Source: Octopus sinensis (Eukaryota). Taken from it: a stretch of 64,000 nt of DNA. This document shows, in pieces, positions 25,011-64,000 of this stretch (position 1 is its first letter; every line of letters starts with the position of its first letter). The stretch is taken from assembly GCF_006345805.1 (NCBI RefSeq), contig NC_043002.1:48050001-48114000 (forward strand), given 5' to 3'. Under the pieces are notes generated by a model. The model was given only the letters and a program-made list of their open reading frames with translations, searched no databases and was not told the DNA's origin. Position numbers and translations under genes: made by a program.

Positions 25011-25039
25011 CGATATATATATATATATATATATATGTG

Positions 25040-42900: not shown

Positions 42901-43009
42901 TATAGCTAAATGTGTAGTAGATTTGAAAACATATGGGATTAAGCCTAATGTAATAATAATAATTGAAAGGGTGTATGATCTGAAATCCCTTATTAGAACT
43001 ATGAAGTAG

Positions 43010-43315
43010 CAACTCATAGTTTAAAAAGTTTGTTTCAAAACCATGTGTTTCTAGGTTCAATCCCGCTGCACAGAACCTTGGGCAAGAGCTTTCTATTATA
43101 GCCTCGAGTTGACCAACGTCTTGTGAGTAAAACTGAGTAGATGGAAACATTGGTGTGATAAATTATTTGTGATATTATGTCCTTAGAGGGGTATAATTGA
43201 ATTGGTAAGCTTAACCATTCTATAAAATGAATACCAGACTTAATATAATTCATAAAACCCCCTTAGAAATGGCATCCCAGTGTGGCTGCGGTTCAATGCA
43301 TGAAACGAGTAAAAG
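43010..43315 (+). mobile_element. tRNA-derived SINE, decayed
   Basis: ccatgtgtttctaggttcaatccc..ccttgggcaag..tatagcctcg..acgagtaaaagcataa. Confidence 0.6.
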
Positions 43316-43669
43316 CATAACAATATGGCTAAGGGGAGCGTGTTCTACATGCTACATCTCACATATGTACAGCAGAATCTCACATATGTAATATAGTGGG
43401 TCGACAATATTCAATCAGTTGAAATTATACTTGCAATTAGAAGAAAAGCTCACTCTAGAGGGTATTTAAAGTTTTAAAACGGCATGTAAAGGAAGCAACT
43501 CCAATACTACCAAGTAATCTAAATTTTTGAAAGATAACAATAGTACTGTTACAAATGGTTTTTACTACTGAAGCAAACTGGTAAAACAGGTGTCGTTTTG
43601 ATGTTGTTAGATCTCATCAAAGACGCATATTCAGCCCAGATGGTAAGACGAGATGATCAGTGTGTGTGC

Positions 43670-43935
43670 GTGTGGTGAAGGTATATGGCTCATGGTTAGG
43701 GTGTTGCACTAACGATCGCAAGATTGTGGTTTTGATTTCCTGACCGGCAGTGCGTTGTGTTCTCGAGCAAAACTCTTCATTTCATGTTGTTTCAGTTCAG
43801 TCAGTTGTGAGTAACAATGCAATGGACTGGTACTCTGTTCGGGGAAAATGTTGGCCTACCAGCCTAGCCAGCAGAATGATATCATTCGAAAGCAGCAACA
43901 ATACGAGGAAAATAATATTCTACAATCAAGTCGAT
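43670..43935 (+). mobile_element. tRNA-derived SINE (family of 15414)
   Basis: gtgaaggtatatggctcatggttagggtgttg..tcgagcaaaactcttcatttcatgttg. Confidence 0.6.
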
Positions 43936-43939
43936 ACAG

Positions 43940-43977
<38 letters not shown>

Positions 43978-46364
43978 CTTCATGGTAAAATGTGACTAAT
44001 TATGAATATCGATAGTGGATCTCAAAGAAATCAGCTCAAGATGGCTCTCTATCCTAAATTCATATTCAGTAGAATTTCACAAATGTAATACAGCAAACTG
44101 AAAAAAATCCAGTGGCTGGGATTCTTCTTGTAATCAGAAAACAAAATCTCGCTTCGTGTTTATAAAGAACGTGCAGTGGCTTCATGCAGGCATGGCATGG
44201 ATTTGATCCTCGATCGCCAAATTTCACATAAGAGTTCAACAGCACTTTTCTCACAGTGAAGCAATAGCTTTTCTGTGACAGCAGCTATATTTACCAGATA
44301 CCTTCGCTAAGCAGAATAATGTCTTTGCCACTTGACCCTTCTAACTGCTTCTAGGCCACCAAAAGTTAGAATTGAAATAACAGACACCACCAACGAAACC
44401 TATTGTCCTCAACAATATGTCTCTCCTGACTGGTTTTGCATGGTTATAAATACTAGAATTTGGTAAGGCAAAATCAATTAGTGAACCAAGACAACTAGTC
44501 ATGGCTATAAGTAGGCAGCCACTAAAGACAAATGGCCAGAGTGAGAAAGAAGGTTACAATCAGCCAACTATGAGGCACAACTTCACTCGACTTCATTAAC
44601 TTTCACTAGCTCAATTTCTTTTCTCTCACAGCATCATTCGATCACTGCCTATAGTTTACTACTAAAATAAGAACGTGTACACACATACAGGCCAAAATTA
44701 ACTTTCTTAACCTTACATACTCTTTCAATTACATCACACCTGCACGTCAAGGCATGGCATTACATTAAGTAACGTTAAATAAATATTTCTTTACAATTTC
44801 GATCACTGTTCTTCTTCCATCTTGCACATCTGGTGTCCACTGATTTCACCTCAACTAAAAACATTACCGTCACAAACGCTTTAAAATCTTATTTAAGACT
44901 AACTATAGATGTACTATCTTAGCTCTTGTAAGAATATGCGATATTATTAGACATACTGAAGTGCTAACGATAGATTCCTGTGGTGTAAAATATCTATCGT
45001 GCTGTGGAAAGGGGATAGTAGATGTGTCTGTGTGAGAGAGAAAGAAAGAAAGAGAGAGAGATTTAAATGAATGCTACAGGTACATATATACATTTACTCA
45101 CATACGAAAGCAATTGGTGCGTGCATGACGATTAGCTGTATGTGAGAAAGTAGGGTTGGATATGTGTACATATCCCCACGCCATTAACGTTCGTATGTGT
45201 ATGAATGTGAGTATGTGTGAACATAGATAAGGAGTTTTCCCAACTATCTATTATTTTAATAACTGTGTTCTTAACTCGCTTGCTAAAAGATGTGTAATGG
45301 TATCTATTGGTCACGGGTGTTATCAACTATGTAATATCAAGCGCTTCTTAAATTATTTTATTATCGAAACGGAATTTGATGTGTTATGTCGGACAATGAT
45401 CATAGAACACGACAGCAAGAATTCGATCGAGAGAGGCGGAGAACGTATAGGGTAATATTAAGAAAAGAGTAAGGAGGAGAAATAAGAATTAGGGATAAAG
45501 AGACATGAAACATTAATTCAGGAGAACATGAATAAAATTAAGGCACGAAACGGAGCTAGAAGGTGTCGTATGACGAACAACAAAACTGAAGCTATAAGGA
45601 AATAAAACGAGAATTGTTAATCAAGTAAGACGGTAGAGTATAAACGATAATGAAAGGCAAGAATATTTTGCGTCAGGCAAAATGAGGAATCAAGCTTGAA
45701 AAAAAAACATGACCGAATCTGATTTATCTTTACAGAAATTAATCAAAGAATTATGGGAGAAATGACAGTGGGGAGATGTTTATGGCTGATATTGTACTAC
45801 AAAACGGGCCGTAGAATTTCTATGGGTACCGCTATTAATATATCATTGCGTATAAATATGATACTATAGGATTGACATGTGATATCTCCTGGGCCAAACA
45901 TACGAGAATTAATAATTCTCTCCGAGTCGCACTATGTGCAATCAAACTTCATAGAATAAAGGTGTTATTTTCCAACTGAAATATAATGAAGTAGCTGCAT
46001 ATGAGACTTGTTAATCGCCTCTTTTAACAACATCAGAAGCGATGACAAATTATATCAACCTTAAGAGACTGAACTGTGTATTAAACTGATGTTGTCTGTC
46101 GCAAACATGTGAGAAGAAATAAAGGCGATTCTTATCGGGTGTCAAATAAATAATTGAATAACTTCAAATAAATTTTTTTTTAAATTCCGAAGTGTTGGAT
46201 TTGTCAATGTTAATTAGCAAAATGCGCGTACGTAGAACCATAAGCACACGCAAATTTCTACTCCAATATCATATATTATCTCTAAGAGTTGGATTTATGG
46301 AAGCGTGAATCACTGTGAAGTAGAATTAACTTCTAACTCTCAAGAGAGAATTACTACATGGCTG

Positions 46365-46545
46365 CTCAGTATGCTAGAAATAGAAGCCAAATGTTTAAAT
46401 CATGTCGTGCCGTCCTGAAAAAAGAAATGACTCATTGGGGAATGTAATTGTAGATATACTATGCCTGAAAACAAGACAGTTTGATGACAGCTGGAATGTA
46501 CTTCTCCCTAGGTCTACTCGACCAGCGTTGATTTGAACTAAACAA
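46365..46545 (+). repeat. Dispersed (CAA)n-tailed repeat copy
   Basis: tacatggctgctcagtatgctagaaatagaagccaaa...ggtctactcgaccag..ctaaacaacaa. Confidence 0.5.
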
Positions 46546-47789
46546 CAAAAATGAGATGACTGTGTGGACACACAACGAAGTTGCCATAGTGCTCTGGTTC
46601 CCCCCACTTATTTTGCTGTGGAAAAACCTATACGATTTTCTATCAATTAATGCTATTGACATCAAACGTTGCCACATTTGTGATGAACAGTTATTAACAA
46701 CCAAACAAAAAAGAAAATACTTAAAGTCAATATTGTTGATGTTTTAACGAGAATGCCTCCATACTATAAAAGAAATATTCCAACTGAGTCAGGTCTTTAG
46801 ATAGCTTTCAGTTTGTTTTTCTTCTAGAGATTTCCGTAACTACAGAACATAGTTTTAACTGCAATTCCTTTGGCAGTGTTTCCAGTTATTGAAGTTAAGT
46901 TTTACATCATTCCTGAAATTATCAACCAATAAGCATAGGCTTCACCGTTTCAGATTAAGAGATATATAAGTTCTATGTTACGAAGTTTGTTTTTCCACAT
47001 CCGAATAATTGAAATGCATATACTTCGGAACAGTATTAAAATATATAAATAAATGAAATAAGAAGGGGAAAAAAAGAAAACGATTCACTGGCAACATAAA
47101 GAAGTTAGTCAAATTATAGGTCCACCATTATTAGATTTTGTAAAAGTAACTTAAGATTAGTTTATGTATATCTTTGCTTAACCCAATATCAATCGTGCAA
47201 TCAAGCTTTTCAGCTGACTCTTCCCTCTTCTTGTATAACATGGGAATCCATCGTCAAGTGCGTCATTCTTTTCTTCTAGGACACTAGGATCTGACTTGAA
47301 GGAGAGTCTATTTCCAGCAGATCGAGAGCATATAAGGTTTCTTCGTAAGCTCGCTTCCTCTATGTAGTTTGTAATTATGATCCACCACAATCAAGATAAG
47401 TCGAACTAATTAAAGAAGTATATACAACTTCAGTGTATTCTTGATCAGTTCTTCAATAATTGATGTAACTTCGCTTTTACCAATAAAAATTTCGTAACTA
47501 ATTTTAGACCGCTAAAAGTACCAACACATGCACGCAGAGTGATTTGTTGATTGTTTGCCTTATGAATATATTTGAAATTGTGCAACACTTCAGTCACTTT
47601 TGATTAATCTTATGAAACATACGTAGAAAGCTAGGAATTTGAGGAAGGGTGTGACCTTAGTACTTGACTGGAACTTTATTTTATCGATCCTGGAGCCAAA
47701 GTAGTCTTCGACAATATTTGAAACCAGAAATGTAACGAAAGCTGCAAAGCAACTTTCCGACGCTCTTACGATTCTGATAATGTCACCAA

Positions 47790-47945
47790 CTATCCCTGTT
47801 CATTGCTATCGAGGCGGAGATGGCTGTCCGCAAGTGCGAGCCCTGTGTGTCAGAGTGGCTGTTCCAGCGCATCTTCCTCACACTCCTTCGGAGCAACGCT
47901 TTTTCCATTTTGTCTACTGGTGCCATGAGAAATGTTATTCATTGA
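47790..47945 (+). mobile_element. CRE-like non-LTR retrotransposon, extreme C-terminus
   Basis: Unlisted frame: EAEMAVRKCEPCVSEWLFQRIFLTLLRSNAFSILSTGAMRNVIH*, resembling the (W/F)LFQRISxAxxRGNAxSIL end of restriction-like-endonuclease CRE elements. Confidence 0.55.
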
Positions 47946-48439
47946 CTTTATCAAAGAGTTTAATGACGCTTACTTAACTGCGCATAAAACCATTTTACAG
48001 ATAAAAGCCAGTCTGGTTTTTACGTCTTACTTTTTTTTTTTATTATATTTTTCACCATTTCAGTCTCTGGTAAATACATTAAGACTTCGTATTCATCGGT
48101 AGCTGAGCTGATCGTCGAAACACCAATATATCTTGCAAATTCTTAATTCATCAGAAATCTAGTTTTGTAAACTCCCAAACAATTAACGATTCCATCGTTA
48201 GCCCATTTTCTTTGACCGACCTTTGAGTACATTATAGATGGCTTATTAGGTACCTACTAGTAGTTGAGCTAAATCCAACGGCAGGAACTTACACAGCTCA
48301 CTTCGGCTACAGAATCCAATGACTACTACAATTCGCTATAAATAATGACAAACATCTCTTCCACGGACTCATACTACCTGACTCACTCGGTGTAAATATT
48401 TTTTTCAGTCGTAGTCACAACATTTTTCTAAGTGGTTTC

Positions 48440-48846
48440 GGATTTTTCGGTTTGACCGGCAGTTTTTTAAAATAATTTCCACGTAACTAAACACTTTTAA
48501 ACTTCGTATACTGGTAGAATGTGTTAATAGAACATCTTTTTCTCTTGGCTTTATTGAGAAAATTCTATTGTTTGTAAGATATTTGTTTTTTTCTTCAATT
48601 TCTGCAATTTCAACCAATCAATGACGTCTATTGAGGTGAAAACATTCTGTGCCGTATGAATATGTCTCTCGTTTAAGAAACAGATTGGGTTTATTTACAT
48701 TTCTGAAGAAAAAAAAGATACCTTTCCCCCCACCCCTAACTCTAAAACAGATTGAAATGCAATAGATCGATACTAGGGTCATAATTATGGGTGACAATTT
48801 CATACGACATCGCTAGAAAAAACTGCCGTTCAAACCGAAAATATCC
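48440..48846. mobile_element. MITE, short-TIR member of the 53247 family
   Basis: TIRs ggatttttcggtttgaccggcagtttt / aaaactgccgttcaaaccgaaaatatcc; left part homologous to the 53251 arm. Confidence 0.7.
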
Positions 48847-49224
48847 GGTTAATGTTTAGATCTTGACCCGGAAATGAAATTCCCCACCACTAAAAAAAAA
48901 AAAAAAAAATACTGGAATGGGTGTAAGACAATGTGTAGGAAATGAATATGAAAAAAAAGGAAAGAAATGCGCGCAAAGCAACGGGAGGGTGGGGAGAGGA
49001 CTTCGGAAAATTCACAAAATCCGAGTTTTTCCATCATAACTTTTAGGAAGATGGGGGTTCTTTCAATGAAATTTTATAGAAATACCTTTCAAACGACATA
49101 CATTACAATTATAAAGTAATTTGTGGGGAAAATCTTTTCCAAAGGGTGGATAGAGGACTTCGGAAAATTCACAAGATCCAAGTTTTTCCCTCATAGCTGT
49201 ATGTGTGTGTGTGAGTAATATATA

Positions 49225-49280
<56 letters not shown>

Positions 49281-49281
<1 letters not shown>

Positions 49282-49652
49282 TAGCAGTATCGCCCGGCGT
49301 TGCTCAGGTTTGTAAGGGAAATAACTATAAAGCATTTTTAGAGAGTTATAGCCAAAAAATAGCAAAAAAATGATGGTAAATTTTTTTTGAGTTAAAAAAG
49401 GTTGAGTTGCGTCCCCTAGACAGTCTGTGGTTTGTGTTTCTGATTCTCGACCCCATGTCGATTTTATCGATTTTTTTCAGAACTGGGGGAACTTTTCAAA
49501 ATTTTCGCTGCGTTAGTTTTGAATTATGACATTGGGCTATGTGTGTGTCAAGTTTCATCAGAATCGGTTGAAAGCCGTGGTCAGGGTGAGGGTACAAGCA
49601 AACAGACACACAGAAACACGCACAGACAAACTGCCGTTTATATATAGAGAGA
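49281..49652 (-). mobile_element. Non-autonomous Helitron (372 bp)
   Basis: 5' A|TCTCTCTATATATAAACGGCAG; 3' gagcaacgccgggcgatactgCTAG|T; in a (TA)n tract; no TSD. Confidence 0.8.
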
Positions 49653-49699
49653 TATATATATATATATATGTGTATATATGTATATATATATGTGTGTGT

Positions 49700-49745
49700 G
49701 TATATATATTATGCATGCATAAAAGTATATATATATGCATGTATA

Positions 49746-49789
<44 letters not shown>

Positions 49790-49950
49790 TGTATATAAGT
49801 ATATATATATGCATGCATAAAAGTATATATATATGCATGCATAAAAGTATATATATATGCATGCATAAAAGTATATATATATGCATGTATATAAGTATAT
49901 ATATATATGCATGCATAAATGTATATATATATATATATGCATGTATATAA
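49700..49950. repeat. ~26-bp minisatellite (atgcatgcataaaagtatatatatat)n, continuing at 50770-50915
   Basis: The same unit occurs on both sides of the 49954 Helitron. Confidence 0.8.
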
Positions 49951-49953
49951 GTA

Positions 49954-50736
49954 CTAGCAGCATAGCCCGGCGTTGCCCGGGTATGTAAGAGCCCCTAGTA
50001 GGCAACAACTAATCCTAATCTAGTCCTTTCCCTCTAGGGAACAAAGGCGCATGTGTAGGTTGCAATGTCTTCTCTTCACTCCTAAATAACTATCAAACAA
50101 CTATCGATAATTCAACCCAACCAATTCCTACCAAGAAGAAATTACATTCGAGACTTTACCCCCAACACCATCACTTCTGCTAATAGCTGCTGTAGCCGCA
50201 AGTTATTCGAATACTTTTTTTGTTTACACTTTCTTTATAACTACCACCCCAAACGTTTTACCTTAAATTTTTGACGTACCCTAAGGGTCCTCGGACGCTG
50301 CTTGCAAATTCTTGGTTTATTATAAACCGCTTTTGTCGTGTGCATCAAAAAACCTTTTCCATTCGTTTGTTCAGTTTGGTCACTTTTGACTTTTTCGTTG
50401 TTGTCACTCATATTGCTGCCCGCTTTTTTGCCGTTTTTGTACATTTTTATACACTTTGGGATACTTACCCCACGTGTTCCGAGAGTTAAAAAGGTCGAGT
50501 TGCGTCCCCTAGAGAGTCTGTAGAAAATGTGTTGCATATAAAAAGCTTAGATTCTCGACCCATGTCGAATTTATCGATTTTTTTTTCAGAACTGGGGGAA
50601 CTTTTTAAAATTTTCGCTGCGTTAGTTTTGAATTATGACATTGAGCTACGTGTGTGTCAAGTTTCATCAGAATCGGTTGAAAGCCGTGGTCAGGGTGAGG
50701 GTACAACCTGACAGACACACAGACAGACACACTGCC

Positions 50737-50745
<9 letters not shown>
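49954..50745 (-). mobile_element. Non-autonomous Helitron (~800 bp) sharing its 5' ~250 bp with the 49281 copy
   Basis: 3' cccgggcaacgccgggctatgctgCTAG|T hairpin; 5' tataaacggcagtgtgtctgtctg. Confidence 0.8.
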
Positions 50746-50777
<32 letters not shown>

Positions 50778-53246
50778 TGCATAAAAGTATATATATATGC
50801 ATGCATAAAAGTATATATATATGCATGTATATAAGTATATATATATATGTGCATGCATAAAAGTATGTATATATATATATATATATGCATGCATAAAAGT
50901 ATATATATATGCATATATATATATATATAGGTGAGAAAGTTGGTGTGTGAAAGCACGTGGTTGAATATATAGAAAATAGTAAAAAGTGAAAAAACTACAG
51001 AAGGCTTGTTTTAAAAGGTTAAAAAATATATATTTGAGTCATTATGTCAGAAGAATATTATAAATTTTTTTCATACAATGACATCGTTTTTGAAGAAATG
51101 ACCGGTTTCGCGTTAAGCTTTTCAAATTTCTTACATCGTTATGTTTTCGTTGAGAAGTGTAAATATATATATACATATACATAGATAGATAACTAGAGAG
51201 AGAGAAAGTAATAACGAGTAAATGAGAATAACGACGAAGGGTTAAAAAAGCGTAAAAATAATTGAAAATGAAATAAAATTGAAGCCAAAACATTAAAATA
51301 TTATTGAAAGCGGGTAGAAAGAAACATTACGTAGTGTAGTAGTACTACGCTAGAGTATTTGTAGAAGGTTGAATGTGATTTCGGAACATAACGAGGAAAA
51401 ATTCGAATCTTAGAAATTTTCCGAAAGTCCTTTCCCCACCTCAAGATTTTCCCCACAAATTACTTTATAGTCATAATGTATGCCGTTTCAAAGGTATTTA
51501 TATAAATTTCATTGAAAAAACCCAATTTTCCTAAAAGCTATGAGGGAAAAACTCGAATTTTGTGAATTTTCCGAAGTTCTCACCCCACCTCCTTGGAAAA
51601 TATTTTCCCAATAAATTTCTTCATAACCGTAATGTATGAAAGGTATTTCTATAAAATTTCATTGCAAAAAACCAATCTAATATTATATCGTTACGTAAGA
51701 ATGAGCAAAGACGTAAATCCCACTTGAAAGAATGAAAGTAAAATAACTGATGGGTCAGACGGTGCTGAGGTTTTAATATAAACCATTTACTGTAATGTAA
51801 TTCGAAATAACAATAAATATATACATTCAGTTTGTTGAATGGTAATAAACATTCAGCTTATTGAACTATACTTCGAAAAATATATCAAGCGTGCACTGTA
51901 CTATTAAAAAACAAAAAAGTAATTATGAACAACCACCAGATAAATATTAGGATTAGATTAGTATGAAAGAGAAAAGAAATTATTTTCGATTCTTTAAGTT
52001 AATAAAATATTCCTGTATTATAATTTATCAATTTGTTGACTGGGTTATTTAACTTATTAGGGTATTTTATTATTATCATTATTTTTGCTATCTTTGTACT
52101 TCTTATCAAAGTTATATGCCGGAATTGCTCATTAATCTTCATTCAAAATGAAAATAAAACTCACTCAAACCAATAATTTATTTGCTCACATGCTCTGATT
52201 TGAAAACATTAAAAACACAAAATAGAAATGACGAATTATATTGTAATTACTACTAACTAAATCATTAAGTTTACTATTATCTTTTTTTTAAAACAGTTAT
52301 TTCATTTTTATTTTTCAAATAAACACGGAAACGTATCATTAGAGTATCAAGTTATGGATGATTGACGATATTGAATATGCAAAAGAAAAATATAAAGTTA
52401 ACGTCAGCTTTAATTGGTAGGCTGGAAATTGAAAACATCGCTGGAAGTATAACAAAATAATAATGGAAATAAATAAAGACCAAAAGAAGTCGATGGTGAA
52501 ATAAACTGTTTTTAAAATGTTGCTACAAAAATAGATATTTTCAAGTCATATATATGTAGTCTAATAGAAACGTGTATTTAAAATTAAAAAGGAAGTTATA
52601 TATATATACATACATACAAAATTTAGAAACCTGTACGATCCCTCCCAGTCAGCAGAATTTTTTTTACGCCCACCATTAAAAACCCTGACAAGTCTTTTTC
52701 ATAATCTAGTACTATGCTTACTCTGAAATTAGTTATTAACATCCAGACATACCATACATAACCCAATCTAGCCCTTGTCTTATTAAGCCAACGGTGGTAG
52801 GCAGAGTTAAACTTGATTGCACTGTAATCATTGCAAAAAGGAAATTAACCTGTTTTTCTGTATCTTATTTAAATGCAGTTATTTGAAGTTTGGAATTAAC
52901 TGGTAGTTTTGGCAATTAGACGGAATAACCTACCGAAAATGGATAGAAAATTTCACGTTAACTGATTTTTGTTTTCAACCAAACAGGATTGGCCTCCCAG
53001 ATTTCTCTCTTTTTTTTATTAAGTTAAACGGGTTTGATACCAATCAATAAATCAAATTTAGAAAATAGAACTGAATTTTTCTTCACAGAAACGGGATGTA
53101 TGATTTTAATATTCTCAGTTACAATGGTACACTATATCTAGTGATGCACAACCCTCTTTCCAATGCGGCCCACATTTTTTTTTAACGTTTGTTAACCCTA
53201 GAAATCAAGAAAGCAAAACCCACAATCAATGTTTAACACACAAATA

Positions 53247-53968
53247 AGATCTTTTCCTTTTGAACGGCAGTTTTCAACACAATTTCTAGTTAACTAAATA
53301 CTTTTAAACTTCGTATACTGGTAGAATGTGTCAAAATAAAACATTTTTTCCTCTTGGCTTTCTTGAGAAAATTGCAACTTGTAAGTTTAACGTAGTTTAA
53401 TTTTCCGAATTTTAACCAATCCTATGCCCTCTATTGAACTAAAATCATTTGCTGCGTCTAAAACAGACAACATCCTGTCACTAACCCTAACCCTAAATTT
53501 TAGCCTTTCGTTTTTTTTTCTTAATTGTTAAGGATAACAATGAAGAAAAAAAAAAACGAAAGCAATGGAAAATAATTTTAATTTAACAATTAAGAAAAAA
53601 AAACGAAAGGCTAAAACGAAAGCAAAAACTCAAAACAAAAACAAAACGAATAATTTTAGACACACGCGTAACAATTAAATTAATTTAACAATTAAGAAAA
53701 AAAACGAAAGGCTAAAATTTAGGGTTAGGGTTAGTGACAGGATGTTGTCTGTTTTAGACGCAGCAAATGATTTTAGCTCAATAGAGGGCATAGGATTGGT
53801 TAAAATTCGAAAAATTAAACTACGTTAAACTTACAAATTACAATTTTCTCAAGAAAGCCAAGAGAAAAAATGTTATATTTTGACACATTCTACCAGTATA
53901 CGAAGTTTAAAAGTGTTTAGTTAACTAGAAATTGTGTTGAAAACTGCCGTTCAAAAGGAAAAGCTCCC
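53247..53968. mobile_element. Foldback-type MITE, ~280-bp TIRs, with (TTAGGG)2 at the inner arm ends
   Basis: 53251-53531 is a near-perfect reverse complement of 53685-53963; possible 7-bp TSD acaaata (53240, 53969). Confidence 0.8.
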
Positions 53969-54734
53969 ACAAATATAATTCAAGCTGTAATATATGAAAA
54001 TAAGCGAATAGTAACAGTAGCCATATTTGAAGAGTTAAAATATCAAATTATGTAAAAATAAATAGTGTGATTGTGAAAAGTATTATTAATATGCGTACTT
54101 TTATCTAAATATAGAAATGCTGTTGTGGCCTACTAACAACTGAACGCATAATCTCGTATTATGTTATTGCTGGTCAGACTTGATCGAGTAGATCTATGAT
54201 CAAAATGAAATATAACCGCAAATCTGAGAGAGAAGGAGGAGGAAACGAATCTGTAGAGAGAGAAGAGGAAGGAAACGATCTGTTGTAAGAGGTGACTCTG
54301 ACGAGAATCTCAGGCTATATTAAAATAATCTCTGACGAGTTTAGAATCAAAGCTTTTAACTTAATTATAACAAAAAATTGATGGAATGTTCTGGAACGTT
54401 CTATCATCATTTTGACACTAACAACTTATCACAACCGCAGTGCGATATTATTGGCTAGAATAAATGTTGAAGAGCGTATATGTTTGTGTTAGCGGATTAA
54501 CATTTACAGTTATTTTATTACTAAATATGGTATTGTCGACAAAACAGTACCTTCTTTACATAGACACGTTGCAGATTCGATTCCCAAGAAAGCTGATCCT
54601 GTACAAAAGCATTTCTTCTACACAAGATATTCAAAAGAAAGTTCTAACAATAAGTACTGAAACAATTTTGTGTCATAAATATTTTAATGGCCAATATTTC
54701 TGTCGTATGTAAAAAAAAAAAAAAAAATTCTTTT

Positions 54735-56650
54735 TGTAATAATTCGAACCCTAACCGCTGGATGTTCGCATAAGCAAGAGATTGCAGACCTGTTTCAGAA
54801 TGACTGACAAGATCGCAATCGTCAACGTATAAAAGTTCCCTAATGAGTGAAGTAAAAACCTTCGTTTTGAATTTCAGTCTGATCAGATTAAAAACACTCC
54901 ATGTTGTTCGATGTTTTATGTAAATACCCTCCTCAGAATTTTGAAAATCATGTGATACTACAATAGCAAAGTATATTGCAAAGAGGGTGGATGCATCAAG
55001 ATCTTGCTTTATTCCATTTTCCAAGGCAAAAGATTCAGAGAGCCCACCACCAAAGTTAACTCTAGCTTTCACATCTTGATGTAAAGCCTTGATCATGTTT
55101 ACAAATTTTTCTGGGCAACCTCTTTTCCTTAGAATTAACCACAGAACATTTCGATTAACAGTATCGAATGCTTTGCTCAAATCAACAAAGCAATGGTATA
55201 AAGCAAGATTCTGTTCAATGTAATTTTCTTGTAATTGTAAAGATAAAATCAGCTGTGCCCCTGGAGGAAGGAAAACCACACTGAGACTGAGACACTATAT
55301 TTGGAACTATGAAGGTATTTAAACGTTCTAACAAAATGCGGGCAAACACCTTTCCAACCACAGACAAAAGCGAAATCCCATGAAAATTACACACAAATCC
55401 TTTGGTCCCGATTTATACAAGGTGACTAAAATGGCATCAACCCAGTCTGAGGCACTTTCTCAGTTCTCCAACAGTGACAATTTAATATATTTAAGAGTTC
55501 AAACATTTTGTCACCCCCATATTTCAAGACTTCTGCACACATTCCATCAGACCTTGGAGACTTATTGTTATTCAGCTTATTCACAGCTAAATAAATGTCA
55601 TTCAGAGTTGGTTCAAATGCCATCTCTTCTATAACTGGGAGGTGTTCGATTTTATTCTATCAACCTCATGTCAGCGGATGATGGTCTATTCAAAAGTACA
55701 AAAAAATGTTCTACCCTGCGCTTATGAATAGAAGCGGTGTCAGTCAAGCAAACGTCTATTTGCTGTTTTCACTGGAGCTATTGAAGATTTTGGGCCATAT
55801 ACCTCCTTAACATAAGAGTACAAACCCTTGGCATCATTTCTATCAGCTGCTTCTTGTGCCCCTTTTGTTCTATCATTCCACCATTCCTGTTTAATTTTCC
55901 TTAGAGCAGTCTGCACTTTCCCTTTCAGCATGCTTCGTTTGAGTTGGGGTTCAAGGATGGAGAAAGAAATCTATTGCCTAAGTTTTGTTTTTATAAAAGT
56001 GGATCATGAATTTCTGCTGATCTATCTGAGGACCAGCCACTGGACTTAAGTGATTTAACTCCCACTGATGAACTTGCAGCCTGAAATAGTTTTGTTTTGA
56101 AATCTTCCCATAGATTGTTTGGGTCAAGATTGGTACTTTCTATAGCATCGTGGAATTTTTGCAAGTTGCTTGATAATTTAAAGTTTGCAACATTTAACTT
56201 TTTGGGTACCTTAGGACCAGACTGTCAATTTTTAGGCATTATCGAAAAATCTATTTTTCCACGCACTAGATGATGGTCAGTCCACCTCTCTTTCCCTCTC
56301 ATGGCCCGAACGCTAGAAACATCTTTCGTATCACGTTTTTTGATCAGAATATAATCTATGAGATGCCAGTGCTTAGATCTTGGGTGCATCCAGGTAGTTT
56401 TATATTTATTTTTCTGCTTCAGCAGAATGTTGGTGACAACTAGATTATTCTCAGTACAAAGCGTAAAAAAGGCTACTCCATTTTTATTGCATTTTCCAAT
56501 CCCATGTCGACCTAAAATAGGCCATGAAACATAATCCTTTTCAACTCTTGCATTGAGATATCCCAATATGACCAGCTTGTCAAAACTTGGTATTTTCCTC
56601 AATAATTGTGCTAGTTCATCATAAAACTGTCGTACAGTTTCATCCGGCGA
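54735..56650 (-). mobile_element. BovB-like RTE LINE, APE plus RT, frameshifted, truncated at both ends
   Basis: LVILG.LNARV, GRHGIGKCNKNG, TWMHPRSKHWHLIDYI, WTDH; KSPRSDG; FVDLSKAFDTVNR, GIKQD, IRELLYVDDCDL. Confidence 0.9.
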
Positions 56651-56682
56651 GGATCAAGTTAGTGAACCTACTTATATATATC

Positions 56683-57025
56683 ATCATCGTTTAACGTCCG
56701 CTTTCCATGCTAGCATGGGTTAGACGATTTTGACTGAGGGCCGGCGAGCCAGATGGCTGCACCAGGCTCCAATCTTGATCTGGCAGTTTCTACAGCTGAA
56801 TTCCCTTCCTAACACCAACCACTCCGAGAGTGTAGTGGGTGCTTTTTACGTGCCACTGGCACGGGAGCCAGTCAGGCGGCACTGGCAACGACCTTGCTCG
56901 AATCTTTTTACACGTGCCACCGGCACAGGTGCCAGTGAAGCGACGTTGGTAACGATCACGCTCGAATGGTGCCCTTTTACGTGCCACGGGTACGGAAGCC
57001 AGTTGGCTGCTCTGGCAACGATCAG
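56683..57025 (-). mobile_element. Young RTE-tail-related element with internal ~70-bp subrepeats
   Basis: Minus strand ends catgctagcatggaaagcggacgttaaacgatgatgat; CpG intact. Confidence 0.7.
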
Positions 57026-57077
57026 ATATATATATATATGTGTATATATATATATATTCAGAGTGTACATATATATA

Positions 57078-57963
57078 CAAGGTGTCCCAAGAGTCACCGG
57101 TGGGTTTCAGTTTTTAATAACTTCCTTAACTTTACAAATAAATGCATGAAATTTTGATACAATATAAGAAACATAATGGCAATCAATATGCAACGAGTCA
57201 AATTTTGCAACACCTCTATATCACATATGAAAAATGACATCGCTTAAATGGCAGCCGTTTTCGGCTTTGCACGCTCGTACTCTTTCCAAATGTTGCACCG
57301 TAACACCCTGAAGAGTTTCAGACCCCACTTTTCTGATTTCTCTATTGATATTCTCCTTTAGTTGCACCAGGGTCTCCGGTTTGTTGACGTAAACCCTCCC
57401 TCTCAGGTATACCCACAAAAAAAAAATCCGGGCTAGTCAAGTCTGGAGAACGTGAAGGCCATTCAGGTAGACCTCACACATGGTTCCTGCAAGATGGAGC
57501 AACTGCTCATACCGCAAGAGATATAATGCGGTTGCTACGACAGTACTTTGGAGAGAGAATAATCTCCCGCTACGGCAATGCCAACTGGCCTTCACGTTCC
57601 CGGACTTGACTAGCCCGAATTTTTTCTTGTGGGGATACCTGAAAGAGAGGGTTTACATCAACAAACTGGAGACCCTAGTGCAAATGAAGGAGATCGTCAA
57701 TACAGAAATCAGAGAAGTGGGGTCTAAAACTCTTGAGGGTGTTATGGTGCAACTTTTGGAAAGCGCACGGACGTGCGAAACTGAAAATGGCTGCCATTTA
57801 AGCGATGTCATTTTTTTATTTGTGATGTAGTGGTTTTTCAAAATTTGACTTGTGCATATTAATTTCCATTATGTCCTTTATATTGTATCAAAATTTTATG
57901 TATTTGTAAAGTTAAGGAAGTTATTAAAAACTGAAACCTATCAGTGACTCTTTGGACACCTTG
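57078..57963. mobile_element. Palindromic non-autonomous Tc1/mariner built from two 3' ends of a DD41D (rosa-like) transposase
   Basis: TA|CAAGGTGTCC...GGACACCTTG|TA; arms 57078-57461 and 57586-57963 both encode WPSRSPDLTSP(D/N)FFLWGYLK.RVY; spacer encodes WFLQDGATAHTAR..FGERIISR; D-to-D spacing counts as 41. Confidence 0.85.
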
Positions 57964-57975
57964 TATGTATGTATG

Positions 57976-58028
<53 letters not shown>

Positions 58029-58098
58029 TATATATATATTATAGGATCTTTGTGGTTTTTGGACACCTTGTATGTATGTATGTATGTATGTATGTATG

Positions 58099-58129
<31 letters not shown>

Positions 58130-58177
58130 TATAGGATCTTTGTGGTTTTTGGACACCTTGTATGTATGTATGTATAT

Positions 58178-58212
<35 letters not shown>

Positions 58213-58215
58213 TAT

Positions 58216-58885
58216 AAGATCTTTGTGGTTTTCGTCATTGTTTACAATTATCTTTAAAATGCTTAATGTATCATATAGATGTCACTTTTGACACTGAATC
58301 TGAATTTGTTATTCAGTTATTCCAGAAAAATTTTGCGAAAATGCTACAGGTATTCAAAGTTTGATAATTTTCAGAATTTTTAGCCAATCAGAAAAGAGCG
58401 CGTTCGCTGTCTCTTCCATCATCGGGAAGTGGTGGGGATCGGCACGTCAAAGCATTAAACTAGCTACAGTAAACAGACAACATTCACGTGTAAATTAAAT
58501 ATTTAAAAGCTACGACCAAACAAACCAACAGGAGTTGCTAGAAATAATAGTTAAAACACAGTTTAAAACAGACTTTTATTTTTAAAAAATCAAGAACGAA
58601 ATTTTGCAATATACTCTAGGATTTTATAAAATAAATAATCTTTCTCCTCCTTGTGTGCATGCGCAGCATCTATGGTTACTATGGAAACAATTCTTCGCTA
58701 CAGTGACGTGTAAAATACTCGCTTTTCATTGGCTAAAATACCCAAATTTTGCAAATTTTAAAGGCAAATAACTTTTTAATTATGGATTTATCGGGAAAAT
58801 GAATTTCATTTTCATAATTAATATACAAGACTTAATCCATATACCAAATTTGAAAGCAATTGGAACAAAATTGTAAACGATGACG
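58216..58885. mobile_element. MITE with TIR cgtcattgtttacaatt / aattgtaaacgatgacg; right end abutted by a SINE
   Basis: Direct TIR match with one mismatch; a SINE head starts at ~58885. Confidence 0.55.
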
Positions 58886-59043
58886 CAGGAGTGACTGTGT
58901 GGTAAGAAGCATGCTTCCTAATCACATGGTTCTGGGTTCAGTCCCACTGCATGGTACCTTGGTCAAGTGTCTTCTACTATAACCTCGGGACAATTAAAAC
59001 TTTGTGACCGGATTTGGTAGACAGAAACTGAAAGAAGCCCGTC

Positions 59044-59045
<2 letters not shown>
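58885..59045 (+). mobile_element. tRNA-derived SINE
   Basis: gcaggagtgactgtgtggtaag..ggttctgggttcagtcccactgc..gaaactgaaagaagcccgtcg. Confidence 0.8.
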
Positions 59046-59096
<51 letters not shown>

Positions 59097-59098
<2 letters not shown>

Positions 59099-61465
59099 AG
59101 CAATAGTACCTGGCGTTGCACGGGTCAGAAAGTATTAAATATTTAGAGGGTCTAGTTATGTTGTCAGTCAACATTACAGCAGTCTGGACCTCAATCGGTA
59201 GTGCAAAAATGAATTGGGCATTCTAAAGTTTTATAGAGTTTTATTTAGGTTAAGTTTAGAGTTGACAATGCAATCTAACATCACTAAGTCTATGACAAAT
59301 AAGTGTTTATCCACCGTCCATGTAGTGACTCATGTTGCATACCTCTCTGTATCACTGTTGCCCGGTGCCATTCGATAATGCAAAGTTGTTGTGTGCTTTG
59401 CAATGGTGTGTAGAATTATATTTGGGTTTATCAGATGTAGACACAGAGAGTGGATCAAAACGTGTATTTCACAAGTGAGCATTTTTGAGGATTGGGCTGT
59501 TTAAACAATCGTTAAATATGACAGTCATTAAAATGGGAGTGGGGTTGATTGAATGTTGATTAGTTGTCATGATGTATAGGTAGTATCGTCGTTGAATGTT
59601 TGTCTACACCATTTATGTCGCAGAATTCCCGAAACTGCCATAGCGAATGCGTTCTATGTATCTCTGCCCTTTTCATAAGCCTCTACCAGTTAATTGGAGT
59701 GTAACGAACTTAGTGTGAGTGAATATCTTCTCTTTCGGGGTACAAGAAAGCAATCACTAGCCGTTGCTTTAATAATCCAGAATTCTACCAGTCAGAAACA
59801 ACAAGACGCAGACGTAAAAGATATATATACTACTTTATTCTCTTTCTTGGTAACAGTAACAATAAGTGGTTATCTGATGTCCTTGGTTCTGGGCGCGCAA
59901 GGCTGAAAGTTAATCGATTGTAATATTTACAATGTTCAGCCGCTAAAAACAGAACGGGTCAAAATTGGCGTCCGGAGGAAGAAGATGATGACTACAACAA
60001 TTCAGGTTAAAAGTCTTCGGCCGACTGCTATCAAATACGGACAGAGAGAATATACGTGTAGTACCTTCGATAGCCATGTCCCAAGTCCCCGCTGACTGCT
60101 GCTAGTGGTCAAACGTTCTACGACCCCCTTGCCTCGCTAAATGCCACGTAGGCAAAAGGGTTCTTCCGGTGGTTCGCGCATGCGCGAGAGGGCCCTTCCC
60201 TTTTCTGCCTTGGTAAAGGCACCAACACGCGTGAAATAGAAAATGGACGGTGCGCGAGCGCGCCGTTATAGGATCACTACAGGAGTAACATTGCATGCCT
60301 CCTTTGTGCTTATACATTGAATGTATTAGAAGCGCATAAGAAAACACTAATCGGTTGAAGTTACGTCCTTAAAGATGCTCGATTCCCCCTTAAGCTATTG
60401 TTGGAGTAATTATCCCTCTTTTTTTTTTTTTTGTTAAAAACTAAGAGGAGTGTAACTTAATAGGTTTCTCTTTGTGAAATGGGCTGATTGTGTGCTGTTA
60501 GTTTTAGAGTAAAATCGGATATAAAGCCCATTACACACGTCTGAGAGGATGATGTCTAAATCAGCTGCTTTGTGAAACTGTACGTTACCTTTTCACAGTG
60601 TAAACAGTTATGAAGTCTCATCCTAATACCTCTTGGTAGACAATATTTTTCGTTCTACCCTGGGGTGAGTAAACGAAGAGACTTTCCTTGCTTCTCACCC
60701 GGGAACAACCGACGTATAGTTGACCGTGTGAGAAGCATGGTTCATCTAAATGCAGCCCTGCCACCGATAGTGTCTGCCCCTGTGACTAATTGATTGACAT
60801 TGTAAAACATAGTCTAAGCGGAAACTGCAGACGGCGAAATGCAATGGGAATATCTGCACCAGAGGGAATGAAGGGGATTCTGTGGGTGAAAACGTCCTCT
60901 CCTTTGCCACAGCCGGACAAAATGGTGACTTCAAGAACATAATGCATAACCTTCTTAATAATCAAGCGTGTTCCATTGCAAAGCTTTGGAGGGTCTAAAT
61001 TCCTCAGCAGCATGACAGGAGCTCCGACTTTAACTTCCAGTGTATGAGGAGGTAGCCCAAGTGGGTCAAGGGAATTAAGAAATTGCACTGGATAGTTCAT
61101 TGCCTGGTCGTCGTCGGGTACAGAATCGACTGACCCGTATACGTGCAGCCTTCCAGGAAGCGAATGCAGCAACTTAGCATTGAGAGCGGTCACTGTGCTG
61201 TTGTTTTTTGGAGCCAAAATGGCTCTTTTGGAAATCTAATTCATGTCAAGGTAGTTCCTTCGTAGATTTGGGAAGACGTGTGCCTCTAGTTCATCGGAAT
61301 TACTGACAGTTCTCCGTTTTCATCGAGCGGAACAATACCGTTTCCGATTGACAATGTGTCAGATGCAAAATCTGATGCCTTCTGGGCACCACGAAGCTGC
61401 GCTCTCATGTTTGTTTTGAGAGACAATGTTGTAACATTTTGCCACAGGGGTGTGGGGACTTATTC
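59097..61465 (-). mobile_element. 5'-truncated Helitron derived from an autonomous element
   Basis: Helicase C-terminus at 60618-61460; 3' end cccgtgcaacgccaggtactattgCTTG|T (variant of CTAG) in (TA)n. Confidence 0.8.
60618..61460 (-). pseudogene. Helitron PIF1-like helicase C-terminal fragment, frameshifted
   Basis: LWQNVTTLSLKTNMR, YPVQFLNSLDPLGLPPHTLEVKVGAPVMLLRNLDPPKLCNGTRL, RLQFPLRLCFTMSIN, SQGQTL, FSHGQLYVGCSRV, TKNIVYQEVL*. Confidence 0.92.
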
Positions 61466-61608
61466 TTTTCGGTAATTCAAGAAAGCCACTTTTATTTTTT
61501 GTTTTGTTTTAATTTCTCTATTATTGTTGGATTCATTTTTAATTATATTGCTATACTCAAAGATTGCTGATAAGCTAAAGATCGAGTAACATTGTAACAC
61601 ATATCTTA

Positions 61609-62082
61609 AAAGACAGAACGAAGCAAGCATCATCATTGTTTTAACATCCATTTTTGCATGGTTGCAAAGGACAAACGAAATTAGTTGAGGTAGATTATAT
61701 TATATATTAATGAATAATAATAACAACAACGATAATTAATAAACATCTCAAATTACCTGAAATGAAGTAGCTAATGTGTGAAGCCATAACAGATTTGCTA
61801 ATGATGATTAATACTCAAATTTCTGTTTGTGAGCTTATAAAGTTCTAACTTTATAAGCTCACAAACAGAAATTTGAGTATTAATCATCATTAGCAAATCT
61901 GTTATGGCTTCACACATTAGCTACTTCATTTCAGGTAATTTGAGATGTTTATTAATTATCGTTGTTGTTATTATTATTCATTAATATATAATATAATCTA
62001 CCTCAACTAATTTCGTTTGTCCTTTGCAACCATGCAAAAATGGATGTTAAAACAATGATGATGCTTGCTTCGTTCTGTCTTT
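61609..62082. repeat. Perfect palindrome: 236-bp arms, 2-nt spacer (ct, 61845-61846)
   Basis: Checked block by block: position x pairs with 123691-x with no mismatch or indel from 61609 to 61844. Confidence 0.98.
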
Positions 62083-62246
62083 GGAGCAAGAAATAATGAA
62101 ATGAATTTTCTTAGCCAGTATCCATTTAGTGGACTGAAAATGAAGAAGTTTCTCATTCAAATGGTCAACCAAAAGGAAAGTATTGTCTCTAATTATTAGA
62201 TCTCACCTCAGTTATATGCTCTCTATCTGGTTTTCTCATTTGGTAG

Positions 62247-62381
62247 AGTTCATAATATTTTCACTGGGAACCAAAGTTGAGCAGGCTATACATTCTAAGC
62301 AAATCATTTGGAGTGTCTGTACTTTATTGCATATCCAAAGAGAACACCATGCTTTTGAAACAATTAGAATATATGCGAAGG
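62247..62381 (+). CDS. Weak candidate 135-nt exon (xFIIFSLGTKVEQAIHSKQIIWSVCTLLHIQREHHAFETIRIYAK)
   Basis: ggttttctcatttggtag| acceptor and AGG|gtaaga donor, open in phase 1-1, in CpG-depleted sequence. No homology recognised. Confidence 0.2.
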
Positions 62382-64000
62382 GTAAGAGGATATGGTTCAT
62401 AATGGTTTTGTAAGTCAAATAAATTCCATTTTCTTTTTAGTAAATGAGCTGAGGTAAAAATGATTCAAAGCAAATACCACACAGAAAGAAGAGAGTTAGA
62501 AGCAACTCAGAAGGATGAATTTTAGGACATCAGTTCTTTCAGTCTCAGTTCACATATCAATAATATCAAATATGAAATAAATGGTACTGTTATTGTCTAT
62601 ATCGTTAGCTACAAAAGTCACTTGCCCAATTCTATCCATTTAACTAGCAGATACCCTGAGTTTTAGAGACACAACAGCAATATTAATTACCTTTGATGGT
62701 TGGCCTCATGAGAAAGCTTCTGCATTGTCACTAGACCTGTCTGGAATAGCAGCCAAATTTTTGTTAAATCATTCTTTATTCTATTTTTAAAATGTTGGGA
62801 TGGTTATGATTAGAATGCCTTTGATCATAGGTCTGGTCAATTAAGGCTGACTTGGAGCTAAAAAAATAAACTATTGATCTTTCAAGACTTGAACTCTATT
62901 GGAAAGTTGAAATTAATTCAAGATAATGTAAAAAATATGTTGGAATTGTCACATATTTCATTTGGCAGAGGCACATTATGACTTTGAATTAATTAGTTCT
63001 AACATATTGAACTTTGATGGGAATATTTTTCCATGTAACTTATCATAGAAGGTTGTGAACAACTCACTAAATTGACTCAAATAGATTGTACACCAATGCA
63101 TTTATAACAGACTGCAAAGTTGCCAAAATTATAATTAAATGTGATTGTAGTGAGGTAAAGTATGTGTCAGGCAATTGTTTAGGCTAATAATAGCAGTTTA
63201 TGAATGATTGCACATTAGGAAGTACAAATCAACAATTGTATTTTGGGCTACTCTTACCCAATACCAAGAATGGAATGATTACTTGTCTAGTTTAGGCTCA
63301 ATATTTTTTGTAACTCAGAGCTCAAGATGAGTACTGCAAAATTGAACAGAATGAGGACATTAAAGTTATTCATGATTGTAAACATTAAAAACTTGTTTTT
63401 AATGTATTTTGAGACATACTGCAAATGTGTCTAAGCTTAAAAACAGAGAGAACATAGCATTTGAAGTTTAATTTTTATAGATTAGATTTAAAACCAGTTA
63501 AATGCATTAGCAGAAAACAATCTAGTTGACTTTATAGAATCTGTTACTTAAAGGCAAACAAGAATCATTAACATTGGTAACATTTGTCTGGCTAAATACT
63601 ATGGATATGTGAGTAAGGTTACTTCTTGAAGTAAAATGACAAGAAAAATTATTTGAGAAATTGCAATAGAAGCTATTATTTCCACAGAAGCATCACTACA
63701 GCAGGTGTCCTATTACAGTTAAATCATCTTACTGTTTGCATCAGTCAAGCTGTCAATGAAACTGAAAGAAATTACTCAGATAATGAACATGAATTCAGCT
63801 GAGTGATTCACACACCCACTATATTTCTTGCTTTGTATGAGATTTACTTTCTAGTCAAATGACAAATCATTATAATGTATAGTTACAAATATTGGCTGTT
63901 TCTCATTATGCATCTCAAAAAATTGCTCATTGTACTATATTCAACCACAAATTAGAAATAAAGTATACAAATGACAATAGGATTATTTCATAATAATAGC

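What the first reader, a model, noticed from the sequence alone, without database searches (positions are those of the whole stretch)
61609..62082. Perfect 474-bp palindrome (236-bp arms, 2-nt spacer) at a domain boundary
Seen: zero mismatches between arms of non-repetitive sequence; ~145 bp from the 5' truncation of a Helitron; CpG-retaining DNA lies to the left and CpG-depleted DNA begins immediately to the right. Known: perfect long palindromes are unstable (cruciforms, breakage) and arise by fold-back repair or template switching, but library and assembly fold-backs mimic them. Inference: if real, a very recent rearrangement scar, possibly tied to rolling-circle activity, and an ideal ADAR/Dicer substrate.
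Basis: partly seen in the sequence, partly recalled or inferred. Interest (0 to 1): 0.7.

Follow-up and report, generated by a model that had tools for sequence, protein, structure and literature searches.

The report
Perfect 474-bp palindrome, origin unverified
A 474-base stretch of what looks like octopus DNA is a perfect hairpin-forming palindrome, most simply an inverted copy of the neighbouring 236 bases pasted in during DNA repair or replication, but without the raw reads it cannot be told apart from a sequencing or assembly artefact.

Summary
The arms 61609-61844 and 61847-62082 are 236 nt and 100% complementary, with a 2-nt spacer (CT). The arm sequence is non-repetitive and occurs nowhere else in the window. 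The next largest perfect non-microsatellite palindrome has 16-nt arms. A genuine 5'-truncated Helitron transposase fragment (best solved-structure match Helraiser, E 5e-49) ends 150-335 bp to the left. CpG o/e drops from 0.80 on the left to 0.04 on the right.

My preferred reading (about 0.5) is a recent 238-bp templated insertion: an inverted copy of the adjacent 236 bp made by fold-back priming or template switching, with a zero-microhomology second junction. It fits the absence of a target-site duplication, of other copies and of any complementarity beyond the arms.

Three simple artefact routes do not fit the anatomy:
- a symmetric fold-back read;
- a missed adapter;
- a de Bruijn inverted loop.

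A doubly chimeric molecule or a false join (about 0.35) cannot be excluded, because no reads or second assembly were reachable. Nothing ties the palindrome to Helitron activity, and the ADAR/Dicer idea is untested. The arm cannot be assigned to either CpG domain. If real, this is a young member of a known class, the local fold-back inversion or long palindrome. Interest is moderate to low.

The parts
61609..61844 (+). Left arm of the palindrome (236 nt, GC 28%, 3 CpGs)
61845..61846 (.). Central 2-nt asymmetric spacer CT. In a hairpin the loop would be the 4 nt TCTA.
61847..62082 (+). Right arm, the exact reverse complement of the left arm
61460..61608 (.). AT-rich left flank of unknown origin, between the truncated Helitron fragment and the palindrome. 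No target-site duplication: it ends ...CATATCTTA, while the right flank starts GGAGCAAG.
60624..61459 (-). 5'-truncated Helitron RepHel (Pif1-type helicase) C-terminal fragment. It is a neighbour, not shown to be part of the event.
   Evidence: Homology is alignable to 61274; the stretch to 61459 is motif-level only.
62083..64000 (.). Right flank: strongly CpG-depleted (o/e 0.04), non-coding in all six frames, no similarity to the rest of the window
34144..61608 (.). CpG-retaining block (o/e 0.80) rich in degraded transposons; the palindrome sits at its right edge

Best explanation
The palindrome is a real 238-bp templated insertion in the sequenced animal's DNA. It is an inverted copy of the immediately adjacent 236 bp, plus 2 nt at the turn. 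The ancestral allele was flank-arm-flank with a single arm.

Inferred mechanism: a break or stalled fork arose at the end of that arm. The 3' end then either folded back on a few complementary bases near the tip, or switched to the complementary strand in trans. It copied 236 nt backwards, was displaced, and was joined to the other side without microhomology, as in end joining. The result is a perfect hairpin-capable palindrome with a 2-nt asymmetric centre.

What is shown: the anatomy. What is inferred: the mechanism, which arm is the copy, and the young age. No function is implied; it is most likely a neutral and probably unstable scar.
For: - The inverted copy abuts its template with only 2 nt between, and identity is 236/236.
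- Complementarity ends abruptly at both outer junctions and the two flanks are unrelated (31/100 paired). The structure is therefore A-P-P'-B, not a whole-molecule fold-back.
- Read directly, neither outer junction shows microhomology in either polarity, and there is no target-site duplication.
- The arm has no second copy in the window and no protein or metagenome match, so it does not look like a repeat family.
- This matches the local fold-back inversions described at yeast double-strand breaks: inserts of 10 to over 150 bp, priming from a short inverted microhomology, and a second junction with 0-5 bp of microhomology (PMC11724301). It also matches palindrome formation started by short inverted repeats (review PMC7999016).
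- Simple artefact signatures are absent. Fold-back artefact reads are symmetric about the read midpoint (PMC12338684). A de Bruijn inverted loop needs a self-complementary centre, and CT is not one (PMC9528984).
- The window has no Ns.
Against: - No independent molecule, read set, second haplotype or orthologous empty site could be reached.
- At 236 nt the insert is longer than most documented fold-back inserts.
- Perfect long palindromes with almost no spacer are reported to be fragile (PMC7999016). Finding one intact requires either extreme youth or an artefact.
- Its position within about 250 bp of one of only two CpG-domain boundaries in 64 kb (roughly 1-2% by chance, my estimate) is not explained by this model. 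It would also fit a false join.
Confidence: 0.5

Rival explanations
1. Library or assembly artefact. The A-P-P'-B arrangement existed only in a chimeric molecule (a double template switch during amplification or repair synthesis) or in a false join of a contig end carrying a short fold-back to the next contig. Polishing then made the arms identical.
For: - Fold-back reads are a known class: about 0.55-0.6% of ONT genomic reads, and more after whole-genome amplification (PMC12338684; Pacasus preprint 10.1101/173872, listed).
- Perfect identity and a near-zero spacer are what a consensus of one molecule against itself gives.
- The palindrome coincides with an abrupt change in CpG content, as expected if two unrelated pieces were joined.
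- Near-perfect duplication also marks the other edge of the same block: 34144-34549 against 34731-35137.
- Natural perfect palindromes of this size are expected to be unstable (PMC7999016).
Against: - A simple fold-back read gives arms that run to the read ends with mirrored flanks. Here the arms stop at 236 nt and the flanks are unrelated.
- There is no adapter remnant at the centre or the edges.
- The centre is not self-complementary, so this is not a de Bruijn inverted-loop unitig.
- There are no Ns or gaps in 64 kb.
- From general knowledge of assemblers, consensus polishing normally removes an insertion carried by a single backbone read.
- PacBio HiFi shows virtually no fold-back reads. 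The sequencing platform of this assembly is unknown.
Confidence: 0.35
2. A young copy of a foldback-type or palindromic MITE transposon whose long terminal inverted repeats make up almost the whole element.
For: The same CpG-retaining block contains two inverted-repeat elements of similar arm size:
- 53248-53963, with arms of about 282 nt at 97% identity and a related solo copy at 48444-48646;
- a mariner-derived element at about 57150-57895, with arms 86% alike.
Against: - No target-site duplication of any length: the left flank ends ...TCTTA and the right flank starts GGAGC....
- No other copy or fragment in the window, unlike the 53-kb element.
- The spacer is 2 nt, against about 180 nt in the two elements above.
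- No recognisable terminal motifs.
- No match among 5.8 billion proteins.
Confidence: 0.07
3. By-product of Helitron rolling-circle transposition: strand switching by the replication machinery while the neighbouring Helitron was copied or truncated.
For: A genuine 5'-truncated RepHel fragment ends 150-335 bp away.
Against: - The palindrome has no Helitron sequence, no 5'-TC or CTRR-3' ends and no 16-20-nt subterminal hairpin context.
- 150 bp or more of unrelated AT-rich DNA lies in between.
- The Helitron fragment carries a frameshift and internal stops and is only 87% identical to its best protein match, so it looks far older than a 100%-identical duplication.
Confidence: 0.04
4. A functional hairpin-RNA locus (a long dsRNA, siRNA or miRNA-like precursor, or an ADAR substrate) kept perfect by selection or gene conversion.
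For: If transcribed, it would form a perfect 236-bp duplex. Hairpin covariance models match the centre.
Against: - All Rfam hits fall below the gathering score. They come from unrelated plant and animal miRNA families and hit both strands equally, so they reflect structure alone.
- The arm has no coding or known target similarity.
- There is no evidence of transcription.
- A single perfect copy gives no evidence of conservation.
Confidence: 0.04

Closest known systems
Local fold-back inversions (templated inverted insertions) at repaired double-strand breaks, as described in yeast (PMC11724301), and synthesis-dependent or polymerase-theta 'snap-back' insertions
   Same: An inverted copy lies directly next to its template. 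The turn-around spans a few nucleotides. The far junction has 0-5 bp of microhomology. There is no target-site duplication.
   Different: At 236 nt the insert is above the usual range (mostly 5-34 bp, with some over 150 bp). The priming microhomology cannot be recovered from the product. No empty allele is in hand.
Human palindromic AT-rich repeats (PATRR11, PATRR22, PATRR17)
   Same: Several hundred bp in length, nearly perfect symmetry and essentially no spacer. Strong predicted cruciform or hairpin potential. Expected fragility.
   Different: PATRRs are more than 90% AT (PMC4940405), whereas this palindrome is 72% AT. PATRRs are polymorphic translocation hotspots, which is not testable here.
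Large palindromes started by short inverted repeats next to a break (Tetrahymena rDNA, yeast and CHO models; reviewed in PMC7999016)
   Same: Fold-back at a short inverted repeat, followed by copying of the adjacent sequence.
   Different: Those events duplicate everything out to the chromosome or amplicon end. Here copying stopped after 236 nt and rejoined the other side.
Fold-back (inverted chimeric) long-read artefacts (PMC12338684; Pacasus, 10.1101/173872)
   Same: Forward and reverse copies of the same sequence are joined head to head with almost no spacer.
   Different: Artefact reads are symmetric about the read midpoint and mirror their flanks. Here the arms are short, internal and flanked by unrelated sequences.

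Membership tests
Local fold-back inversion / templated inverted insertion | Inverted copy immediately adjacent to its template | tested here: met
   Arms are separated by 2 nt and are 100% complementary.
Local fold-back inversion / templated inverted insertion | Second junction with little or no microhomology (0-5 bp) and no target-site duplication | tested here: met
   Read. Continuing the template past the right arm would give TAAGAT, but the flank reads GGAGCA. The reciprocal polarity also shows 0 bp.
Local fold-back inversion / templated inverted insertion | Short pre-existing inverted microhomology at the turn-around point | tested here: inconclusive
   The centre reads AAAGTT-CT-AACTTT. 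The product cannot show how much of this existed before the event.
Local fold-back inversion / templated inverted insertion | An allele or orthologue with a single arm (the empty site) | not testable with these tools
   No eukaryotic genome or read collection could be searched by DNA. The protein-based look-ups found nothing.
PATRR-type palindrome | Several hundred bp, near-perfect symmetry, no spacer | tested here: met
   474 bp, 100% identity, 2-nt spacer.
PATRR-type palindrome | Extreme AT-richness (more than 90%) | tested here: not met
   Arm GC is 28.4%, so AT is 72%. The criterion is taken from PMC4940405.
Foldback / palindromic MITE transposon | Target-site duplication flanking the element | tested here: not met
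   The left flank ends ...CATATCTTA and the right flank starts GGAGCAAG....
Foldback / palindromic MITE transposon | Multiple dispersed copies | tested here: inconclusive
   None in this 64-kb window. The rest of the genome is not available.
Fold-back sequencing-read artefact | Arms extend symmetrically to the molecule ends, so the flanks mirror each other | tested here: not met
   Only 31 of 100 flanking bases are complementary. The definition is from PMC12338684.
Fold-back sequencing-read artefact | Adapter remnant at the junction (missed adapter) | tested here: not met
   Adapter alignment scores are no higher than the window background.
Fold-back sequencing-read artefact | No independent reads spanning both junctions | not testable with these tools
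   Raw reads are not available.
De Bruijn-graph palindromic unitig (inverted loop) | Centre is a self-reverse-complementary (k-1)-mer, giving an exact palindrome with no spacer | tested here: not met
   The central CT is asymmetric: TTCTAA is not its own reverse complement. The criterion is from PMC9528984.
Helitron terminal or internal structure | 5'-TC ... CTRR-3' ends with a short subterminal hairpin, or RepHel coding sequence | tested here: not met
   The palindrome starts AAAGAC and ends GTCTTT. No helicase or Rep homology lies right of about 61459.
miRNA or hairpin-RNA gene | Rfam match at the gathering score, or evidence of conservation | tested here: not met
   The best hit is 67.6 bits against a gathering score of 83. 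The families are unrelated and both strands match.

The most novel reading that the evidence does not exclude
The palindrome is a real germline feature sitting exactly where an unmethylated transposon-rich domain meets a methylated domain in a cephalopod genome, and the coincidence is causal. Either the boundary is a recurrent breakage or replication-stalling site that generates fold-back scars, or the palindrome is transcribed into a perfect 236-bp dsRNA that feeds ADAR editing or small-RNA pathways and helps to set the boundary.
Probability: 0.06. Interest if true: 0.65.

Novelty: new member of a known kind. Interest (0 to 1): 0.3.

Why it matters
If real, this is an unusually long and perfectly preserved example of a fold-back templated insertion in an animal germline. 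It would give a snapshot of a mutational process usually seen only as scars of 5-30 bp, and it would predict a fragile site that should be polymorphic between individuals. It would also be a natural test object for cruciform stability and, if transcribed, for dsRNA editing in a cephalopod. If it is an artefact, it marks a possible false join at 61.6-62.1 kb in the assembly. In either case it is a single locus with no sign of function.

Tried and rejected
- Independent copies via exact-protein look-up of the ORFs 60786-61217(-) and 61460-61651(-): not on record.
- Concatenated six-frame peptides of 61362-62803 searched against 5.8 billion proteins, to find any contig from the same or a related species: no hit.
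- A 35-mer from the arm searched against metagenome contigs: no match.
- Species identification from transposon ORFs: the best named cephalopod hits are Octopus bimaculoides at 70-75% amino-acid identity. The taxon is probably an octopod. The species, and therefore the sequencing platform, remain unknown.
- Assigning the arm to the CpG-rich or CpG-poor domain with Markov models and CpG counts per tile, to decide which arm is the original: inconclusive. My first impression, that the arm belongs to the left domain, did not hold up.
- Host exons in the right flank, to reach an orthologous locus: none visible in six frames. No obvious host exon elsewhere in the window either.
- Chance was considered and rejected.
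- Two head-to-head insertions of the same retroelement were rejected, because both would have to be truncated at exactly 236 nt with no homology beyond.
- A retroposed snap-back cDNA was rejected, because the outer ends read 5'-AAA...TTT-3', the wrong polarity, and there are no poly(A)/poly(T) tracts.
- hAT-type hairpin footprints were rejected, because they span only a few nucleotides.
- An integrated hairpin-ended linear element or virus was rejected, because the block consists of ordinary host transposons (LINE, mariner, SINE, Helitron).

Full report
**1. The observation**

- The repeat finder reports arms 61609-61844 and 61847-62082, 236 nt, 100% complementary, with 2 nt between them. A direct string comparison confirms this and gives the spacer as CT.
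- Complementarity does not continue outward: 31 of the next 100 positions pair, which is the random expectation.
- The arm is ordinary, non-repetitive, AT-rich DNA (GC 28%). It has no other copy in the 64-kb window; only short low-complexity hits appear.
- I scanned every possible centre with spacers of 0-12 nt. The next largest perfect palindrome outside microsatellites has 16-nt arms. This one is an isolated outlier, not part of a pattern.
- As single-stranded DNA it folds into one hairpin of -280 kcal/mol with a 4-nt loop (TCTA), z = -50 against shuffles.

**2. The setting**

The window has no Ns. It is full of TA/TG microsatellites and degraded transposon fragments: LINE endonuclease and reverse transcriptase, mariner, SINEs.

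Transposon-derived ORFs find their best named relatives in Octopus bimaculoides at 70-75% amino-acid identity. The source is probably an octopod, but the species, and therefore the sequencing technology, could not be identified.

CpG content defines three domains:

| Region | CpG o/e |
|---|---|
| 1-33500 | 0.24 |
| about 34144-61608 | 0.80 |
| 62083-64000 | 0.04 (2 CpGs in 1918 bp) |

The CpG-retaining block contains old, broken elements. These include a frameshifted LINE, a mariner-derived inverted repeat whose arms are only 86% alike, and a Helitron fragment with a frameshift. Its CpG retention therefore reflects a long-standing lack of germline methylation, not youth. Both edges of the block are sharp at a scale below 1 kb, so a sharp edge at the palindrome needs no rearrangement to explain it.

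**3. The Helitron**

On the minus strand, 60624-61274 aligns to Pif1-type helicases. The best solved-structure match is the Helitron transposase Helraiser (7lcc_A), residues 1271-1461 of 1496, E 4.9e-49. Cellular PIF1 scores about 1e-12.

This is a genuine RepHel fragment lacking roughly its first 1200 codons. A stop-free continuation with a helicase-like motif runs to about 61459 (my recognition, not a test). The truncation point is therefore 150-335 bp left of the palindrome. The intervening 61460-61608 is AT-rich DNA of unknown origin. No Rep or N-terminal helicase homology lies to the right of the palindrome.

**4. Anatomy of the junctions (read)**

- Left junction: ...CACATATCTTA | AAAGACAGAACG...
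- Centre: ...CTTATAAAGTT-CT-AACTTTATAAG...
- Right junction: ...CGTTCTGTCTTT | GGAGCAAGAAAT...

There is no target-site duplication of any length. If copying had continued past either arm, the next bases would not match the actual flank, so both outer junctions show 0 bp of microhomology in either polarity. The structure is A-P-P'-B with unrelated A and B.

**5. Which arm is the original?**

My first reading of the CpG counts (3 per arm, o/e 0.64) suggested that the arm belongs to the left domain. A proper test did not confirm this.
- Markov models trained on the two domain types give a log-likelihood ratio near zero.
- Three CpGs per 236 bp is unremarkable for both tile distributions: 25% of CpG-rich tiles have 3 or fewer, and 17% of CpG-poor tiles have 3 or more.
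- Only the immediate right flank, with 0-1 CpG per tile, looks different.

The polarity of the event is unresolved.

**6. What it is not**

- Transposon. There is no target-site duplication and no second copy. The spacer is 2 nt, whereas the two inverted-repeat elements in the same block have spacers of about 180 nt, diverged arms, and in one case a related solo copy.
- Helitron structure. The palindrome lacks Helitron termini and coding sequence.
- RNA gene. Rfam gives only sub-threshold matches to unrelated plant and animal miRNA hairpin models, on both strands, which is what any perfect hairpin produces.
- Other origins rejected on polarity, length or content: two head-to-head truncated retroelements, a retroposed snap-back cDNA, hairpin-excision footprints, and an integrated hairpin-ended element.

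**7. Real or artefact?**

No reads, second assembly or orthologue could be reached. Exact-protein look-ups, a six-frame peptide search against 5.8 billion proteins and a 35-mer scan of metagenome contigs all came back empty. The question has to be weighed on anatomy alone.

Three common artefact routes do not fit.
- Fold-back artefact reads are defined by a breakpoint at the read midpoint with both halves mapping to the same place. They would give mirrored flanks, not A and B (PMC12338684). Their rate is about 0.55-0.6% of ONT genomic reads and essentially zero in HiFi.
- De Bruijn-graph palindromic unitigs need a self-complementary (k-1)-mer at the centre (PMC9528984). The CT spacer breaks that symmetry.

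What remains on the artefact side is a molecule with two template switches, or a contig end carrying a short fold-back that was then falsely joined to the next contig. Either is possible, especially with amplified or noisy-read libraries.

Several points support the artefact side:
- the palindrome lies within about 250 bp of one of only two CpG-domain boundaries in 64 kb, roughly 1-2% by chance on my estimate;
- the other edge of the same block carries a near-perfect 406-bp tandem duplication;
- perfect long palindromes are reported to be fragile (PMC7999016).

**8. Best explanation**

The most economical biological reading is a 238-bp templated insertion. The ancestral allele was A-P-B. A break or stalled fork arose at the P/B boundary (or, in the mirror polarity, at the A/P boundary). 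The 3' end folded back on a few complementary bases, or switched strands in trans. It copied 236 nt and was then joined to the other side without microhomology.

This is the architecture of the local fold-back inversions recovered at an HO-induced break in yeast. Those inserts ranged from 10 to over 150 bp, were primed from a short inverted microhomology, and had a second junction with 0-5 bp of microhomology (PMC11724301). It is also the architecture of palindrome formation started by short inverted repeats (PMC7999016).

At 236 nt this case is at or beyond the long end of the documented range. Zero differences in 236 positions caps the divergence between the arms at about 1.3% (95% bound, my calculation). 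The event is therefore recent, unless conversion between the arms keeps them identical. For comparison, the other inverted repeats in the block stand at 97% and 86%.

I put this explanation at about 0.5, an artefact at about 0.35, and the remainder on a transposon, a Helitron link or a functional hairpin.

**9. Comparison with known classes**

In size and symmetry the palindrome resembles human PATRRs. It fails their defining AT content of more than 90% (72% here; PMC4940405). It works like a fold-back templated insertion and meets the features of that class that could be tested. The decisive feature, an empty allele, could not be tested.

**10. Verdict**

If real, the palindrome is a new, unusually long and pristine member of a known kind, with no evidence of function and no demonstrated link to the Helitron. 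Interest is moderate to low until reads or a second individual settle whether it exists.

Noticed in passing
window 1-64000: Three sharply bounded CpG domains: o/e 0.24 (1-33500), 0.80 (about 34144-62082) and 0.04 (62083-64000). This is consistent with mosaic germline methylation. The CpG-retaining block is full of old transposon fragments, so its CpG retention is not due to youth.
   Followed up: partly
window 34144-35137: A 406-bp CpG-rich unit (34144-34549) is repeated at 34731-35137 with about 100% identity (one indel). It is embedded in a microsatellite/minisatellite array (33600-35220) exactly at the left edge of the CpG-retaining block. The block therefore has a perfect direct duplication at one edge and a perfect inverted one at the other.
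   Followed up: partly
window 53248-53963 and 48444-48646: A long inverted-repeat element with arms of about 282 nt at 97% identity. Its spacer of about 150-180 nt contains internal short repeats. A diverged solo copy of the arm (76-79%) lies 5 kb away. It is probably a foldback-type or long-TIR transposon family.
   Followed up: partly
window 57150-57895: Two inverted copies of a mariner-like transposase 3' fragment with its terminus. The arms are about 86% alike over 202 nt and extend further, with a 182-nt spacer. It looks like a palindromic deletion derivative of a mariner element.
   Followed up: partly
window 39450-39562 (+): Full-length 5S rRNA match (73 bits against a gathering score of 38). 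About 20 bp downstream lies a SINE-like module (39585-39741) that recurs at 58884-59007, 25030-25168 and 43056-43131 without the 5S part. Whether this is a 5S gene, a pseudogene or a 5S-headed SINE was not resolved.
   Followed up: partly
window 54647-56653 (-): Degraded LINE with endonuclease and reverse-transcriptase fragments in several frames. Its best relatives are jockey/CR1-like elements, often annotated as 'craniofacial development protein 2-like'.
   Followed up: partly
window 56848-56967: A 64-bp unit repeated 1.9 times at 78% identity, in a GC-richer stretch next to microsatellites.
   Followed up: no
window 61792-61899: Sub-threshold Rfam matches to unrelated miRNA precursor families (MIR7504, MIR774, mir-181 and others) on both strands, centred on the palindrome axis. 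They show how a perfect hairpin draws false miRNA hits.
   Followed up: yes
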